Program-made: the position numbers and the translations under genes
The notes under the pieces: model-generated
Seen by the model: the letters and a program-made list of their open reading frames with translations, nothing else
Databases searched by the model: none
What the model was told of the DNA's origin: nothing
Sequence record: NC_041994.1
Direction: 5' to 3' (one strand)
Length of the DNA stretch: 64,000 nucleotides
Shown here: piece by piece, positions 10,524 through 14,080 of the stretch
Position numbering within the stretch: the first letter of the stretch is position 1
How the letters are laid out: every line of letters starts with the position of its first letter

Positions 10524-11369
10524 TTAGAACGTTTTGTATTCACCACGTTCGGTGGAGACATGTCGGCCGGTTCTCAGATCAGTCTTGATGATGTCATAGT
10601 GTTCGACCTGTACGTGGAGGTGTATCCGAACACCGTCCTTTCTATCGCACCAGCTGTAAACTTGAGTCCCATCGGTGTTTTGAGATTTGTGCGCCTCTTC
10701 TTTGTTGACCGGGTCCCATTCTGCCTCGATCAACTGACAGTTGAGCTCAATGGCGTTCTTCATCCGGTGGACGCATTCCTGCAAAGTACCACCTAGGTTA
10801 ACAGTAACCGGTGCCAGCGCATTACGGGCATCAGCCATCGTGTTCGCCATGTGCAGGGTCGCACCCATGGATCTCGCCAAAGCCACATCAGCCGGCGGAT
10901 CAATGATCGTGTCACGGTAATAGCTACCGATACCGGGCTCACGGAACACGATACCGTCCGCAGAGCGGTCATCGCCACGGTGGTGTTGATCCGCTTTGCG
11001 TTTAACCAGGTCGAACTCTTCCCGAGTCAGACTCAATGTACCGGCCTGGTAGTCGATCAGGGCGTAGAAGCACAGACGCAGCATTTTCCGATGGGTGATG
11101 TCGTAATGATCATCGTCCTGACACACGTCGTGTCCAGTGACCGGGTTGATGTGGAACTCACGCAAGGCGCTCTGTACGTCCTTACGCTCTTCCAACATGT
11201 CGATCACGGCCATGAGCTCCAAGAACTCATTGCGCAGCTCCATGATGGCGTTGCGGCCTTTGTATTGGCTGGCTACACCATGCTGCTGACACTTGAGCGC
11301 TTCTTTAGTGACTTCAGAAGCTTCTTCTGCCAGCTTACCCAAAAGGTACTGCGTCCAATTCATACTCAT
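10524..11369 (-). CDS. MazG-like nucleotide pyrophosphohydrolase domain plus unknown C-terminal domain
   Basis: N-terminal KLAEEASEVTKEALK...ELRNEFLELMAVIDML fits the MazG ExxE...ExxD helix pattern, with the last D replaced by E. Confidence 0.65.
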   Translation of the reverse strand: MSMNWTQYLLGKLAEEASEVTKEALKCQQHGVASQYKGRNAIMELRNEFLELMAVIDMLEERKDVQSALREFHINPVTGHDVCQDDDHYDITHRKMLRLCFYALIDYQAGTLSLTREEFDLVKRKADQHHRGDDRSADGIVFREPGIGSYYRDTIIDPPADVALARSMGATLHMANTMADARNALAPVTVNLGGTLQECVHRMKNAIELNCQLIEAEWDPVNKEEAHKSQNTDGTQVYSWCDRKDGVRIHLHVQVEHYDIIKTDLRTGRHVSTERGEYKTF

Positions 11370-11815
11370 TCTGGTTTGTCCTTTGGTTCGTGGGGAACGG
11401 TAATGGTGCGATAGTACATTTCATGCGCGCGTTGCTGGGGGTCGGTAACGGTGCGGTAGCCCTGTTCAAGCACGCAGTCTGGATTCAATGCACTGACGTC
11501 GCGCTCTAAACCCAAGCTACGGATTGACGCTTGGACTTCACGCAGTGGTTCAGGGATAATGCCACCCAGTGAGTTACGGCAGGAATGCAGGTGCTGTTCT
11601 TTGAGCTCTGCTGCCCGAGCATGGGTTACGAACGTCAACGTAACCTTACCGTCACCGTTAGTACGGTTGGTGGCGTACAGACTGTGTCCGGTGAGATCCA
11701 TTGACTTTTCTAACAGTGTTCTCATCACCTGTTCGTCAAGCATGGTGATGTTGATGTACCCGTCGGATTCCTTGAACATCTCGTAAGAGTCAAAGTTTAG
11801 GTGTTCAGGCTGCAT
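11366..11815 (-). CDS. Hypothetical protein
   Basis: 149-aa ORF coupled by short overlaps to both neighbours. Confidence 0.65.
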   Translation of the reverse strand: MQPEHLNFDSYEMFKESDGYINITMLDEQVMRTLLEKSMDLTGHSLYATNRTNGDGKVTLTFVTHARAAELKEQHLHSCRNSLGGIIPEPLREVQASIRSLGLERDVSALNPDCVLEQGYRTVTDPQQRAHEMYYRTITVPHEPKDKPE

Positions 11816-12203
11816 TGAGTAGCTCCGCTAGTGCCCGTGCTTGAGACACAGGTGTGGTTGCAAAACGGTCTGAGAGCACGCTGCCGGCCTCTTCGGCTAA
11901 AACACGTAGCTCTGCGAACAACTCTGGGTTCTCTTGCACCCAGACACACCACAGCTCCTTGTAGGCGGCATATAGATCCACGCCGGGATCTAATGGTGGT
12001 TTACCCTTACCTATTCGCCAATCATTACCCTGACAACGATAGCCTTTGATGTCTAGCTGGTAGGCTTCCTCGATAGTACGCCCGTCACGAAGACGGGCTA
12101 CCAATGCCGAGAAACGACGATCCCCTTTGGTTGAGCATTCATAGCCACCAAAGCGGGCAAAGGTTACGCTACCTGTTTGAACTCGGGTTGATTGGCCGCT
12201 TGC
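11805..12203 (-). CDS. NADAR-like (YbiA/DarG1, T4 gp30.3-like) domain with no canonical start; possibly the -1 frameshift extension of the DNA polymerase subunit
   Basis: YECSTKGDRRFSALVARLRDGRTIEEAYQLDIK...YKELW...NPEL...VLSDRF matches the NADAR pattern (FS.F...G...xExxYQxxK...W...NP.L..L...L.D). No in-frame ATG/GTG/TTG lies near the domain N-terminus. Confidence 0.6.
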   Translation of the reverse strand, partial: ASGQSTRVQTGSVTFARFGGYECSTKGDRRFSALVARLRDGRTIEEAYQLDIKGYRCQGNDWRIGKGKPPLDPGVDLYAAYKELWCVWVQENPELFAELRVLAEEAGSVLSDRFATTPVSQARALAELLNAA

Positions 12204-14080
12204 TTTTTTGCTTTGTGGGCCAAGTAAGCATCGAGCATGGTGTCGAAGGCTGGAGCACCCAGAACCTTCTGTGCGATCTCGACCGAGTTCACACGACCAC
12301 CCGTCAGGTTTACGCCAAGCTCTCGACGTATCGCTTCCGTAATCCCCTGAATCTGGCAGAACTCCATGACGCAGGTTTCCCGTGCGATGTTGAGAATCTG
12401 CGAAACGTTGGGGTAGGTTGATACAATGTCGAGGTCGGCTACGTGCGTAAAGATCAGCGTGAGATAAGACTGCATCTCCGCCACACACGCAAGCCCTTCT
12501 GCCGCCGCCATATACGACGGTAGCGTGACGATCCAATCATCGTGTCCAATAACAAAGCGATCGAGTTCATGCGACATCTGGTCAGAGGCTGTACCGATAA
12601 CCGATTTGTTCGGACGGTTCAGATACCAGAAGTGCATGTCGTCAGTCAGACGTTTCGGGTTGGAGTTAAAGTTCTTGAAGTCCGAGTTCTTCGAATACAT
12701 CGTAATCGACGAGGCCAGGTCTTTAGTCTTTTCGTCCAACTGCTCCAGACGCACACTGTCGACGATGTTGTAAACACCGTAGACGATCTTGAAGTCTTTC
12801 TGCATGACTTCGTGCCAGCGCAGACCCGTGTACTGATCGGTCTCAGGGATCTTAAGCTTACCGAAGTCCAGCTTCACTTCAACCTCATCACCGATCTTGA
12901 TCTGGTCATGGGTGATGGTTTGGCCAACGAACTCCTCGTTGACGTAGTAGTAGATGAAGCCGCCTTTGTTCTTGGTCATGTCATTCGCCCGGTCCAGGAA
13001 CGCTTGAATGTCCCCCGGGTGTTTGATCACAGTGTCGTAACTGTCGTTGAGTTCCTTCTTGAGAATCGCATCGAGGGCATAAGACGGATCTTTACCGTTC
13101 GCCAGTCGAGTAATGCGATATACCGTCATGGCATCAATACACTGGAAAGTCGCCGGATGGGTTACCCAGTTCCAACGGTCTTCCACGTTGATCGACATGA
13201 CCTTACCGGACGCTGTCGTCTTCTGTGTGTTGCCCTTACGGTAATCGAAGAACTTGTACTTGGCTGGGATTGTAGGATCGCTGAACACGATCGCAGGATC
13301 AATCCCCTCGTTCTGTAAGGCACGGATGATTTTGCTAATGTCGAAGTCCATGTTCCAGAAGGCAAACCAATCTGGCTTCCATTCGTGGAGCTTCTCGATG
13401 CAACGCATAACAACTTGAGCAGGGGTGTCAGCAATCAACACTTCAATGTTCAGTTTGCGCTCGGCAATCAAACTCGGAATAAGACGTTCTGCTTCACGCT
13501 GTGTCTCACCCACCGGATCATCAATGTCAGCGATCCAGCGTTTTAAGTACACTAAGCGTACCTGGTCCTTGTGGCTTACCGACATGCAGATGATGTCGTC
13601 CTTAGGACCACCGTCAATGCCGATTACGTCGGTCTCGATATCACCCCCAGCTACCGTGTTGAAGCTGATGGTGTCAGGGTACTTGGTGCGGTACTCAGCT
13701 TTCTTACAGCAAGCGGAGTTAACGTCAGCACCATAGACGTAAGGTTCGCGTTGAATGACACGTTGCTGTGGACGGAACCCCGGATTGATGTTCAGGGTAC
13801 GGGCGATGTTGTGAACCAGGTCCAGCTGGGTCGAAGAATACTCTTGCAGGTTACTGGCCAGCTCGTAGTCTTTCTTCTCTTTGTGGTTACGACGACCTTT
13901 GTGCGTAATCCAGAACGGACGTTTGTAGTTCTCTTCCAGACGCAAGCGCGGTACACGGCGGCCATCGTCTAGGTGTACGACTTCCTTGATTACCAGCATG
14001 TCGTTCGTACCTTTCTCTTGGTCGACGACATACGTAATGTGTTTAGCTTCAAAGCCTGTGGGTTTTACAATCGTGCTCAC
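12164..14080 (-). CDS. Split family-B DNA polymerase subunit (3'-5' exonuclease plus motif A), phiKZ gp82-like
   Basis: ExoI DIETD, ExoII FWNMDFD, SYALDAIL, ExoIII YNIVD and polymerase motif A DLDIVSTYP. Confidence 0.9.
   Translation of the reverse strand: MSTIVKPTGFEAKHITYVVDQEKGTNDMLVIKEVVHLDDGRRVPRLRLEENYKRPFWITHKGRRNHKEKKDYELASNLQEYSSTQLDLVHNIARTLNINPGFRPQQRVIQREPYVYGADVNSACCKKAEYRTKYPDTISFNTVAGGDIETDVIGIDGGPKDDIICMSVSHKDQVRLVYLKRWIADIDDPVGETQREAERLIPSLIAERKLNIEVLIADTPAQVVMRCIEKLHEWKPDWFAFWNMDFDISKIIRALQNEGIDPAIVFSDPTIPAKYKFFDYRKGNTQKTTASGKVMSINVEDRWNWVTHPATFQCIDAMTVYRITRLANGKDPSYALDAILKKELNDSYDTVIKHPGDIQAFLDRANDMTKNKGGFIYYYVNEEFVGQTITHDQIKIGDEVEVKLDFGKLKIPETDQYTGLRWHEVMQKDFKIVYGVYNIVDSVRLEQLDEKTKDLASSITMYSKNSDFKNFNSNPKRLTDDMHFWYLNRPNKSVIGTASDQMSHELDRFVIGHDDWIVTLPSYMAAAEGLACVAEMQSYLTLIFTHVADLDIVSTYPNVSQILNIARETCVMEFCQIQGITEAIRRELGVNLTGGRVNSVEIAQKVLGAPAFDTMLDAYLAHKAKKQAANQPEFKQVA

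What the first reader, a model, noticed from the sequence alone, without database searches (positions are those of the whole stretch)
11805..12209. Candidate -1 ribosomal frameshift fusing the DNA polymerase subunit to a NADAR (guanine-ADP-ribose eraser) domain
Seen: on the minus strand the polymerase ORF reads GCA AAA AAG, giving the heptamer A_AAA_AAG (plus-strand 12203-12209), 14 codons before its stop. A -1 slip enters the open frame KKASGQSTRVQTGSVTFARFGGYECSTKGDRRFSA..., a NADAR-like domain ending at 11805. That frame has no ATG/GTG/TTG near the domain start; its tracked start lies about 370 nt inside the polymerase gene. Established: A_AAA_AAG is the dnaX-type bacterial shift site. NADARs (DarG1, T4 gp30.3) remove ADP-ribose from guanine, and DarT1 modifies ssDNA guanines and stalls phage replication. 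Inference: a fraction of polymerase (about 758 aa instead of 638 aa) carries an eraser to the replication fork, a replisome-tethered anti-DarTG1 enzyme I do not know to be described. No obvious upstream SD-like stimulator or well-spaced downstream hairpin was seen.
Basis: partly seen in the sequence, partly recalled or inferred. Interest (0 to 1): 0.85.

Follow-up and report, generated by a model that had tools for sequence, protein, structure and literature searches.

The report
Frameshift extends jumbo-phage DNA polymerase
In Pseudomonas jumbo phage Noxifer and its phiKZ-like relatives, a conserved slippery sequence at the end of a DNA polymerase subunit gene very probably makes some ribosomes slip back one base and attach a small, uncharacterised enzyme-like domain to the polymerase, a product that current annotations and a 2026 structural preprint on the phiKZ enzyme do not mention.

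Summary
The window is Pseudomonas phage Noxifer. Its 638-aa DNA polymerase N-subunit (DNAP-N, homolog of phiKZ gp82) has A_AAA_AAG in frame at 12209-12203 (minus strand). The -1 frame is open for 134 codons and encodes a conserved 120-aa domain with no usable start codon.

Comparative evidence strongly supports programmed -1 frameshifting. All 17 distinct relatives with the domain in the -1 frame carry A_AAA_AAG, C_CCA_AAG or G_GGA_AAG inside the short overlap. These are the three most efficient bacterial -1 motifs. Chance is 0.001-0.04 per locus, and 13 loci have no start codon for the domain. Other lineages join the same domain to DNAP-N through a +1-frame overlap, a single in-frame TAG, or a plain in-frame fusion (two lineages). 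The fused protein (758 aa in Noxifer) is therefore the likely functional product.

The NADAR identity is not established. Pfam and profile-profile tests fail, although a positive control works. The PDB fold search finds nothing. Only weak fold hits enriched in NADAR proteins hint at a remote resemblance. Fusion partners (DUF4326, SLOG, AlkB, RNase H) and NAMPT neighbours suggest nucleic-acid or NAD/ADP-ribose chemistry. The anti-DarT role is untested. No description of this frameshift was found in the literature searched.

The parts
12164..14080 (-). Zero-frame ORF of the DNA polymerase N-terminal subunit (DNAP-N, 638 aa; RefSeq FDI21_gp083; homolog of phiKZ gp82, which carries the N-terminal domain, the exonuclease, part of the palm with motif A, and part of the palm-insertion domain).
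   Evidence: ORF. (annotation). (phrog_3011 DNA polymerase, E 6.5e-227). (54.6% identity to phiKZ gp82). (published phiKZ DNAP-N/DNAP-C structure).
12203..12209 (-). Slippery heptamer A_AAA_AAG in the polymerase zero frame (codons GCA AAA AAG, residues A624 K625 K626). This is the proposed site of tandem -1 slippage of tRNA-Lys.
   Evidence: It is the only in-frame X_XXA_AAG in 17,846 codons of the window. The same heptamer is conserved in six other diverged relatives (L008, L009, L010, L013, L016/17, L022). It is one of the three most efficient -1 motifs in E. coli (PMC4066793).
12168..12203 (-). Linker in the -1 frame (ASGQSTRVQTGS, 12 codons) between the shift site and the conserved domain. 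It overlaps the last 12 sense codons of the polymerase ORF.
   Evidence: It contains no ATG/GTG/TTG and no stop. Linker length varies from about 2 to 14 residues among relatives.
11808..12167 (-). Conserved 120-aa enzyme-like domain of unknown function (PHROG 9995 family), followed by TGA at 11805-11807.
   Evidence: phrog_9995, E 3.7e-51. (154+ homologs; 21 invariant columns including R5, Y9, E10, S12, D16, S20, R30, E33, Q37, K41, K54, Y69, D100, Q109). (AlphaFold2 pLDDT 98). (862 representative clusters).
11805..12209 (-). Whole transframe segment: the -1 frame from the heptamer to the stop. It gives the 132 residues added after K626, so the product is 758 aa instead of 638.
12102..12104 (-). 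TTG used as the start of gp082 in RefSeq (99 aa). I reject it as the real N-terminus.
   Evidence: annotation. (it would remove seven invariant residues). (homologs and the PHROG profile begin about 21 residues upstream).
10524..11815 (-). Downstream co-oriented genes overlapping by a few bases: gp081 (11366..11815, 149 aa, no family match) and gp080 (10524..11369, MazG-like NTP pyrophosphohydrolase). Context only.
   Evidence: phrog_4856, E 5e-11.

Best explanation
A minority of ribosomes translating the Noxifer DNAP-N gene slip back one nucleotide on A_AAA_AAG (both Lys-tRNAs re-pair with AAA). They miss the polymerase stop 12 codons later and continue for 132 more codons. The result is a 758-aa DNAP-N carrying a 12-residue linker and a 120-aa accessory domain at its C-terminus, next to the palm-insertion domain of the split B-family replicase. 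The same fusion is made across the Pseudomonas phiKZ-like jumbo phages with whichever top-efficiency heptamer the lineage has (A_AAA_AAG, C_CCA_AAG or G_GGA_AAG). In a few lineages it is made by other routes: a +1-frame overlap, an in-frame TAG, or a direct gene fusion. These steps are shown here: the heptamer, the frame, the absence of a start codon, conservation at the nucleotide level, and the existence of natural in-frame fusions. These steps are inferred: that slippage occurs, and at what rate. The rate is probably low, because no stimulator was found. The domain is a compact, confidently folded module rich in invariant polar residues and does not belong to any curated family. From its fusion partners and neighbours I infer that it acts on nucleic-acid adducts or on NAD/ADP-ribose-derived groups, and that tethering brings this activity to the replication fork. 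My probability that the recoded fusion is real is about 0.85. My probability that the domain removes ADP-ribose from DNA is about 0.2.
For: (1) The heptamer is in the zero frame and the -1 frame is open for 134 codons. (2) The domain has no ATG/GTG/TTG near its start in Noxifer or in 12 further loci, phiKZ included. (3) All 17 polymerase-adjacent -1 loci carry X_XXA_AAG inside the open overlap. Chance per locus is 0.0007-0.039, and only two other X_XXA_AAG occur elsewhere in these polymerase ORFs. (4) In nine C_CCA_AAG loci the codon before CCA always ends in C although the amino acid varies (N, N, S, V, N, A, P, S, L), which is a nucleotide-level constraint. (5) The three heptamers seen are exactly the three most efficient -1 motifs measured in E. 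coli (PMC4066793). (6) The polymerase tree shows the arrangement kept across two deep clades (48-57% polymerase identity) with at least four changes of recoding type. (7) Natural in-frame fusions exist. P0332/L088 is a distant DNAP-N homolog plus the domain in one 698-aa ORF. P0273/L089 is a C-terminal DNAP-N fragment with motif A plus the domain in one 236-aa ORF. L064/L067 have the domain in the polymerase frame behind a single TAG. (8) The domain model has pLDDT 98 and many invariant polar residues. (9) Context: the domain is fused to DUF4326 in 17 of 70 mid-size members, to SLOG in 7, to RNase H in 3, to AlkB-type oxygenase in 2, and to an SF1 helicase. It is embedded in giant multi-domain phage proteins and lies next to NAMPT in four contigs.
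Against: There is no direct evidence for the transframe protein (no proteomics or ribosome profiling available here). No conserved SD-like element or well-spaced hairpin or pseudoknot was found. Heptamers without a stimulator gave only 2-10 times a 0.055% background in E. coli reporters (PMC4066793), so the fusion could be very rare unless a stimulator was missed. In the phiKZ type, the stop codon directly after the heptamer may help. PhiPA3, 201phi2-1, Viktualia and PS119XW also have an ATG or GTG at or near the domain N-terminus, so a free domain can be made there as well. The 2026 cryo-EM preprint on phiKZ DNAP-N/DNAP-C cloned only the annotated gp82 CDS and mentions no extension. That design could not have detected one.
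Confidence: 0.82

Rival explanations
1. The domain is made only as a free protein by non-canonical initiation, or by termination-reinitiation at the polymerase stop, without any fusion. In Noxifer the stop TAA overlaps the GTA codon that corresponds to the N-terminus of stand-alone homologs. The heptamers would then be coincidental or serve another purpose.
For: The polymerase stop lies within a few nucleotides of the homologous N-terminus in many loci (the 'stop-res1' column). Some relatives have ATG or GTG there (PhiPA3, 201phi2-1, Viktualia, PS119XW). Most homologs elsewhere are stand-alone genes with an ATG.
Against: Noxifer, L008 and L009 have not even a near-cognate start (ATA, ATT, CTG) between the heptamer and the invariant R5. 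This does not explain the 17 of 17 conserved top-efficiency heptamers or the invariant third-position C. In L013, L016 and L022 the polymerase stop lies 64-76 nt inside the domain, so reinitiation at the stop would truncate it. Natural in-frame fusions show that the fused form is viable and selected.
Confidence: 0.08
2. The RefSeq model is right: gp082 is an independent 99-aa protein starting at TTG 12104.
For: It is the first canonical start codon downstream in that frame. Annotators made similar truncated calls in Psa21, D6, PS119XW and phiKZ.
Against: It removes 21 residues of a confidently folded domain, including seven invariant residues. The PHROG profile and all homologs extend upstream. 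No SD-like sequence precedes the TTG. The inconsistent calls across genomes (38 aa in phiKZ, no gene in many records) look like failures of gene finders on an ORF that lacks a start codon.
Confidence: 0.03
3. The frame change is made by transcriptional slippage of the phage RNA polymerase on the A-run, not by the ribosome.
For: The Noxifer-type site has six consecutive A residues. Transcriptional slippage gives the same kind of products in some bacteria (established knowledge, for example Thermus dnaX).
Against: Six A is shorter than the runs (about 8-9 or more) usually needed. The C_CCA_AAG and G_GGA_AAG sites of the sister clade have only three A and fit only the tandem-tRNA slippage rule X_XXY_YYZ in the correct frame.
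Confidence: 0.04
4. The arrangement is a decaying gene: the domain lost its start codon, and the heptamer is a chance lysine-rich polymerase tail.
For: None beyond the missing start codon.
Against: The domain is under strong purifying selection in all start-less loci (55-87% identity, all invariant residues kept). The frame is kept open precisely from the heptamer onward. The arrangement persists across genera.
Confidence: 0.02

Closest known systems
E. coli dnaX tau/gamma programmed -1 frameshift
   Same: Identical heptamer A_AAA_AAG read by tRNA-Lys, and the gene encodes a subunit of a replicative DNA polymerase machine. Two products are made from one gene at a set ratio.
   Different: In dnaX the shifted ribosome terminates almost at once, so the minor product (gamma) is shorter. 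An upstream SD-like element and a downstream hairpin drive about 50% efficiency (established knowledge). Here the shift extends the protein by a whole extra domain, and no stimulator was found.
Phage -1 frameshifts near the 3' end of a gene that make a C-terminally extended minor product (lambda G/GT tail chaperone, T7 capsid 10A/10B)
   Same: The slippery heptamer lies shortly before the stop of the upstream ORF. The downstream ORF lacks its own start. The arrangement is conserved across diverged phages even where sequences differ.
   Different: Those cases concern virion assembly proteins. This one concerns the catalytic subunit of the replicase and appends an enzyme-like module.
IS3/IS911 OrfAB transposase frameshifting
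   Same: Uses X_XXA_AAG-class heptamers (PMC4066793) to fuse two overlapping ORFs.
   Different: IS elements use defined stimulators (SD, stem-loop, pseudoknot). The function is transposition control.
Phage NADAR proteins (AdfN, T4 gp30.3) and the DarG1 antitoxin
   Same: Small phage-encoded domains of similar size. They remove ADP-ribose from guanine in DNA and so rescue phage replication (PMC11543638, PMC11825919). There are weak fold-level hints and a similar order of secondary-structure elements. An invariant Glu on the core helix and an invariant Asp after a strand recall the NADAR catalytic residues.
   Different: No sequence or profile relationship, although the positive control works. 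No match to solved NADAR structures. The E-to-K spacing is 8, not 7. About 40 residues shorter than YbiA (120 vs 160). AdfN acts as a free protein.
Q-beta coat/A1 stop-codon readthrough
   Same: Relevant only to the L064/L067 relatives, where the domain follows the polymerase in the same frame after one TAG.
   Different: Not the mechanism in Noxifer, and readthrough in L064 is itself only inferred.

Membership tests
Bacterial-type programmed -1 ribosomal frameshift site | X_XXY_YYZ heptamer positioned in the zero frame of the upstream ORF | tested here: met
   GC A_AAA_AAG at 12209-12203 in the frame of the 638-aa ORF.
Bacterial-type programmed -1 ribosomal frameshift site | The -1 frame is open from the site and encodes a conserved, functional-looking polypeptide that has no initiation codon of its own | tested here: met
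   134 open codons. The domain matches PHROG 9995 at E 3.7e-51 and its model has pLDDT 98. No ATG/GTG/TTG for 321 nt upstream.
Bacterial-type programmed -1 ribosomal frameshift site | The shift site is conserved among diverged relatives beyond what the protein sequence requires | tested here: met
   17 of 17 loci have X_XXA_AAG. Three different heptamers all belong to the top-efficiency class. The third-position C is invariant before CCA_AAG while the amino acid varies.
Bacterial-type programmed -1 ribosomal frameshift site | Stimulatory element: an SD-like sequence about 10 nt upstream, or a hairpin or pseudoknot 5-9 nt downstream (common but not obligatory) | tested here: not met
   No conserved element. 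Downstream folds have z-scores from +1.0 to -3.7 with no common position. In the phiKZ type a stop codon follows the heptamer directly or after one codon.
Bacterial-type programmed -1 ribosomal frameshift site | The transframe protein is observed | not testable with these tools
   Needs proteomics, tagged expression or ribosome profiling.
NADAR superfamily (Pfam PF08719 NADAR / PF08010 Phage_30_3) | Match to the family HMMs | tested here: not met
   The Noxifer domain and 46 homologs were scanned at E<=10, with no NADAR or Phage_30_3 hit.
NADAR superfamily (Pfam PF08719 NADAR / PF08010 Phage_30_3) | Profile-profile similarity to NADAR subfamilies | tested here: not met
   hhalign probability is 0.1% against the YbiA family and 0.13% against the T4 gp30.3 family. 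The control YbiA vs gp30.3 gives 97.8%, E 8e-13.
NADAR superfamily (Pfam PF08719 NADAR / PF08010 Phage_30_3) | YbiA-like fold (helical core flanked by two small sheets) | tested here: inconclusive
   Foldseek against the PDB gives nothing below E=2 and no NADAR entry. Against BFVD, at least 9 of the 42 weak non-family hits (E 0.6-7.5, TM 0.26-0.61) are proteins that a YbiA model hits at E<=3e-5. The order of secondary-structure elements is similar.
NADAR superfamily (Pfam PF08719 NADAR / PF08010 Phage_30_3) | Catalytic Glu and Lys seven residues apart on the core helix, plus Asp/Glu/His after a strand (E88, K95, D171 of E. coli C7 NADAR; PMC11543638) | tested here: inconclusive
   Invariant E33, K41 and D100 occupy topologically similar places, but the E-to-K spacing is 8. 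The equivalence rests on my reading of secondary-structure order, not on a superposition.
NADAR superfamily (Pfam PF08719 NADAR / PF08010 Phage_30_3) | ADP-ribosyl-guanine glycohydrolase activity | not testable with these tools
   Needs a biochemical assay.
PHROG 9995 (phage protein family of unknown function) | Full-length match to the family profile | tested here: met
   E 3.7e-51; residues 15-133 of the -1 segment match profile positions 2-121 of 124.
Chimallivirus/phiKZ-like split B-family DNA polymerase, N subunit (phiKZ gp82, DNAP-N) | Full-length homology to gp82, same length, conserved synteny with phiKZ structural genes | tested here: met
   phrog_3011 at E 6.5e-227. 54.6% identity to phiKZ gp82. 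638 aa in both. Neighbouring virion genes as in phiKZ.

The most novel reading that the evidence does not exclude
The appended module is a minimal, highly diverged NADAR-like (or functionally analogous) glycohydrolase that removes ADP-ribose or a related adduct from template DNA. Phages of the phiKZ group use translational recoding (-1, possibly -2/+1, readthrough) to put it on a set fraction of replicase molecules. This would be a lesion eraser travelling with the replisome, and a counter-defence against DNA ADP-ribosylating toxins such as DarT. It might also explain the Pseudomonas-specific 'little finger' insertion in DNAP-N, which Basu et al. propose binds an unknown partner.
Probability: 0.15. 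Interest if true: 0.9.

Novelty: new member of a known kind. Interest (0 to 1): 0.72.

Why it matters
phiKZ-like nucleus-forming phages are a major model for phage cell biology and are used in therapy cocktails, and their replicase has just been solved. If the frameshift is real, that replicase has an unannotated fourth component, made from the same gene as its catalytic N-subunit, which the structural work did not include. Dozens of GenBank records mis-annotate or omit the gene, including phiKZ, PA7, KTN4, OMKO1, Psa21, D6 and Noxifer. It would be a rare case of recoding used to attach an accessory enzyme-like domain to a replicative polymerase. It would also be an unusually clear evolutionary series, in which the same fusion is reached by -1 slippage on three different heptamers, by a +1-frame overlap, by an in-frame stop and by direct fusion. 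The domain is widespread (862 clusters at 50% identity), has no match in the PDB, and recurs in giant multi-domain phage proteins, so assigning its activity would annotate many genes.

Tried and rejected
- Pfam, NCBI-style names and PDB sequence search for the domain gave only noise.
- Foldseek against the PDB gave no match.
- A faint Pfam hit to DUF488-N3i over the domain's C-terminal half in one giant protein (E 0.005, below the cutoff) was not reproduced in 47 + 70 other members. I dropped it.
- DUF4326 and DUF488-N3a hits in fusion proteins map to a separate neighbouring domain, not to this one.
- A search for stimulatory RNA structure found nothing conserved. A CGGAGGA...TCCTCCG hairpin about 20 nt downstream in four C_CCA_AAG loci is absent from phiKZ and is explained by the conserved peptide RRGGYECSS.
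- The promoter and terminator scan of the junction was at chance level.
- Pfam scans of three giant proteins gave no domains.
- Literature searches for phiKZ/201phi2-1/chimallivirus plus frameshift, and for PHIKZ082.1, returned nothing relevant.
Full report
**Identity of the window and check of the observation.** The region is 100% identical to Pseudomonas phage Noxifer (NC_041994, a 278-kb jumbo phage of P. fluorescens SBW25; record coordinate = window + 62,000). On the minus strand, ORF 12164..14080 encodes a 638-aa protein that matches the phage DNA polymerase family phrog_3011 (E 6.5e-227). It is 54.6% identical to phiKZ gp82. A 2026 preprint shows that gp82 is the N-terminal subunit (DNAP-N) of a split B-family replicase, with gp50 as DNAP-C and gp155 as Rhc (PMC13648687). 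The ORF ends ...GCC CAC AAA GCA AAA AAG CAA GCG GCC AAT CAA CCC GAG TTC AAA CAG GTA GCG TAA. The -1 frame reads KK ASGQSTRVQTGS VTFARFGGYECSTKGDRRFSA... and stops at 11805-11807. The transframe protein would be 626 + 132 = 758 aa. In that frame the nearest upstream start codons are 321 and 369 nt inside the polymerase gene. The next downstream one is the TTG at 12104 that RefSeq uses for gp082.

**The downstream segment is a real, conserved domain whose N-terminus lies upstream of any start codon.** Residues 15-133 of the -1 segment match PHROG 9995 (unknown function) over the whole profile (E 3.7e-51). The 5.8-billion-protein search found 154 homologs at 55-85% identity, none with a Pfam domain. 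In an alignment of 47 of them, 21 columns are invariant. R5, Y9, E10, S12, G15, D16 and S20 all lie upstream of the RefSeq TTG. AlphaFold2 folds the 120 residues with mean pLDDT 98. The annotated 99-aa gp082 is therefore a truncated call.

**Comparative evidence for recoding.** tblastn found the domain immediately downstream of the polymerase gene in the Pseudomonas phiKZ-like jumbo phages, with erratic annotation. phiKZ has a 38-aa 'PHIKZ082.1', many records have no gene there, and others have truncated ORFs.

- *First junctions read.* phiKZ, PhiPA3, PS119XW, 201phi2-1 and Viktualia all carry C_CCA_AAG in the polymerase frame, zero or one codon before the polymerase stop. The -1 frame opens exactly there and runs into the domain.
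- *Wider sample.* I extended this with 80 IMG/VR loci and a script that records the upstream ORF, frame relation, start codons and heptamers for every locus.
- *All -1 loci have a heptamer.* All 17 distinct loci with DNAP-N upstream and the domain in the -1 frame carry X_XXA_AAG inside the open overlap. A_AAA_AAG occurs in the Noxifer clade at 31-103 nt before the stop (7 loci). C_CCA_AAG occurs in 9 loci and G_GGA_AAG in 1.
- *Start codons.* Thirteen of these loci, Noxifer and phiKZ included, have no ATG, GTG or TTG for the domain.
- *Chance.* From base composition, the chance of such a heptamer in the available window is 0.0007-0.039 per locus. Only two other X_XXA_AAG occur in the rest of these polymerase ORFs.
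- *Within the window.* In the 64-kb Noxifer window this is the only in-frame X_XXA_AAG among 17,846 codons of 39 long ORFs.
- *Nucleotide-level constraint.* In the C_CCA_AAG group the preceding codon always ends in C while its amino acid varies (AAC, TCC, GTC, GCC, CCC, CTC).
- *Motif efficiency.* Sharma et al. measured all 64 heptamers in E. coli and found C_CCA_AAG, G_GGA_AAG and A_AAA_AAG to be the most efficient (PMC4066793). These are exactly the three seen here.

**Other ways the same two modules are joined.** A DNAP-N tree has two deep clades. The A_AAA_AAG clade contains a nested lineage (L064/L067). There the last polymerase exon, downstream of an intron-like insert, runs in the same frame as the domain and is separated from it by a single TAG. 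That domain again has no start codon. The other clade has G_GGA_AAG at its base, then C_CCA_AAG, and a nested group (Psa21 = L059, D6, L014, L049, L054, L070) in which the domain is in the +1 frame. All of that group conserve GAA_AAG_AAG in the polymerase frame. The codon at the homologous start position is GTG, GTG, TTG, CTG, ACG or TTC. This group is unresolved. It may use its own start in some members, or a -2 slip of tRNA-Lys from AAG to AAA.

The exhaustive profile search (862 clusters) also turned up two natural in-frame fusions on phiKZ-like contigs:

- P0332 (L088, next to a PhiKZ major capsid gene) is a 698-aa ORF made of a distant DNAP-N homolog (23% identity over 594 aa, E 5e-33) followed by the domain.
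- P0273 (L089) is a 236-aa ORF in which a separately encoded C-terminal DNAP-N fragment, carrying polymerase motif A, continues directly into the domain.

Together these show that a polymerase-domain polypeptide is what selection maintains. The recoding device is interchangeable.

**Stimulators and efficiency.** I found no conserved SD-like element upstream and no consistently placed hairpin downstream. In the phiKZ type the heptamer is followed directly or after one codon by the stop codon. By the classical 'shifty stop' effect (established knowledge, not tested here) this may favour slippage. In E. coli reporters, heptamers without a stimulator gave only 2-10 times a 0.055% background. The fusion may therefore be a rare species unless a stimulator escaped detection.

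**What the domain is.**

- No NADAR (PF08719) or Phage_30_3 (PF08010) hit in 47 members at E<=10.
- hhalign probability is 0.1% against a YbiA-family profile and 0.13% against a T4 gp30.3/AdfN-family profile.
- The positive control, YbiA against gp30.3, gives 97.8% (E 8e-13).
- Foldseek against the PDB returns nothing below E = 2 and no NADAR entry.

Some signal at the fold level remains:

- In the viral structure library, beyond four family members, the domain's weak hits (E 0.6-7.5, TM 0.26-0.61) include at least nine proteins that an AlphaFold model of YbiA itself hits at E<=3e-5. Only 72 library entries reach E<=0.001 with YbiA, so this overlap is far above chance.
- The order of secondary-structure elements is the same in both models.
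- The invariant T-x-E33-x-x-Y-Q helix and the invariant D100 after a strand recall the NADAR catalytic Glu/Lys helix and the strand-end Asp/Glu (PMC11543638). The Glu-to-Lys spacing is 8 rather than 7.

I therefore rate NADAR membership as not met by sequence and inconclusive by fold.

**Context of the domain elsewhere.**

- Among 70 mid-size family members, 17 are fused to DUF4326, 7 to SLOG domains (YAcAr, cpYpsA), 3 to RNase H, 2 to AlkB-type 2OG-Fe(II) oxygenase, and single members to an SF1 helicase and to guanylate kinase.
- Many members sit inside 2,000-6,000-aa multi-domain phage proteins.
- In four independent contigs the free-standing gene lies just downstream of nicotinamide phosphoribosyltransferase.
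- Aravind and colleagues place DUF4326 and SLOG in NAD/ADP-ribose-linked conflict systems that interface with DNA replication and modification (PMC9503650, PMC7824862).
- Phage NADARs are now known to rescue replication by removing DarT1-made ADP-ribose from DNA. T4 AdfN appears to need another phage factor, 'possibly by stabilizing or localizing' it (PMC11825919).

A role in clearing nucleic-acid adducts or ADP-ribose-derived groups at the fork is thus a reasonable inference, but no more than that. One consideration against an anti-DarT role: if these phages replicate inside a protein shell, as phiKZ does (established knowledge; not checked for Noxifer), host enzymes should have limited access to the DNA.

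**Novelty and verdict.** Ten full-text searches and the most recent structural preprint gave no mention of a frameshift, of the small ORF, or of an extension of DNAP-N. The mechanism, -1 slippage on X_XXA_AAG, is a known kind, so this is a new member of that kind. It is unusual in its target (the catalytic subunit of a replicase), in its cargo (a domain with no match in the PDB), and in the range of alternative joining devices seen among relatives. Confidence that the recoded fusion is real is about 0.8-0.85. Confidence that the domain is a remote NADAR-like fold is about 0.4, and that it erases DNA ADP-ribosylation about 0.2.

Noticed in passing
L059 (= phage Psa21), L090 (phage D6), L014, L049/L050, L054, L070; junction about 30 nt before the polymerase stop: A sub-clade has the domain in the +1 frame relative to DNAP-N. 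All members conserve GAA_AAG_AAG at the nucleotide level in the polymerase frame. The codon at the homologous start position is GTG, GTG, TTG, CTG, ACG or TTC, so half lack a canonical start. A -2 slip of A-site tRNA-Lys (AAG to AAA) would reach the domain frame. Unresolved.
   Followed up: partly
L064:2860-3060 and L067 (IMG/VR contigs of 150 and 117 kb): The domain lies in the same frame as the last DNAP-N exon, separated only by one TAG (...DSVMED*LTFQWERFGGYEVS...), and has no start codon before its invariant residues. This implies stop-codon readthrough or suppression in this lineage.
   Followed up: partly
L036:2402-2707 (phage PhiPA3); L064:2215-2650: The PhiPA3 DNAP-N gene is interrupted by a group I intron (Rfam RF00028, 71.7 bits) just before polymerase motif A, between residues equivalent to Noxifer 551 and 552. 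L064 has a structured insert of about 400 nt at about the same place that does not reach the Rfam threshold.
   Followed up: partly
L089:2550-4711 and L088:4001-6097: In L089, DNAP-N is split once more into 482-aa and 236-aa genes, and the second carries motif A fused in frame to the domain. L088 encodes a very divergent DNAP-N plus the domain as one 698-aa gene, next to a PhiKZ-type major capsid gene.
   Followed up: yes
L057, L068, L071, L086 (also L061, L063): The free-standing domain gene sits 0-600 nt downstream of a nicotinamide phosphoribosyltransferase (NAD salvage) gene in at least four different contigs. L086 also has adenylosuccinate synthetase upstream. In L069 the domain follows a PhuZ tubulin gene.
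   Followed up: partly
GenBank/RefSeq records of phiKZ, PA7, KTN4, OMKO1, PS119XW, Psa21, D6, Viktualia, Noxifer (window 11805-12104): The domain gene is annotated inconsistently: 38 aa in phiKZ (PHIKZ082.1), three fragments in Viktualia, truncated ORFs in Noxifer, PS119XW, Psa21 and D6, and no gene in many phiKZ-like records. This is consistent with gene finders failing on an ORF without a start codon.
   Followed up: yes
L005, L006, L038, L046; about 20 nt downstream of C_CCA_AAG: There is a 7-bp hairpin CGGAGGA...TCCTCCG (z about -0.6 to -2.5). It coincides with the conserved peptide RRGGYECSS, is absent from phiKZ itself, and is farther from the heptamer than usual for a stimulator.
   Followed up: partly
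phiKZ DNAP-N residues 350-415 (literature, PMC13648687): Basu et al. report a 'little finger' insertion in DNAP-N found only in Pseudomonas-infecting chimalliviruses and suggest it binds a partner restricted to that subset. In the phage collection searched here, the polymerase-adjacent hits I examined were all Pseudomonas jumbo phages; hits in phages of other host genera were not inspected.
   Followed up: no
window 10524-11815 (minus strand): Directly downstream of the domain, with overlapping start and stop codons, lie a 149-aa ORF with no family match and a MazG-like NTP pyrophosphohydrolase. 201phi2-1 and Viktualia have two small ORFs in the same place.
   Followed up: no
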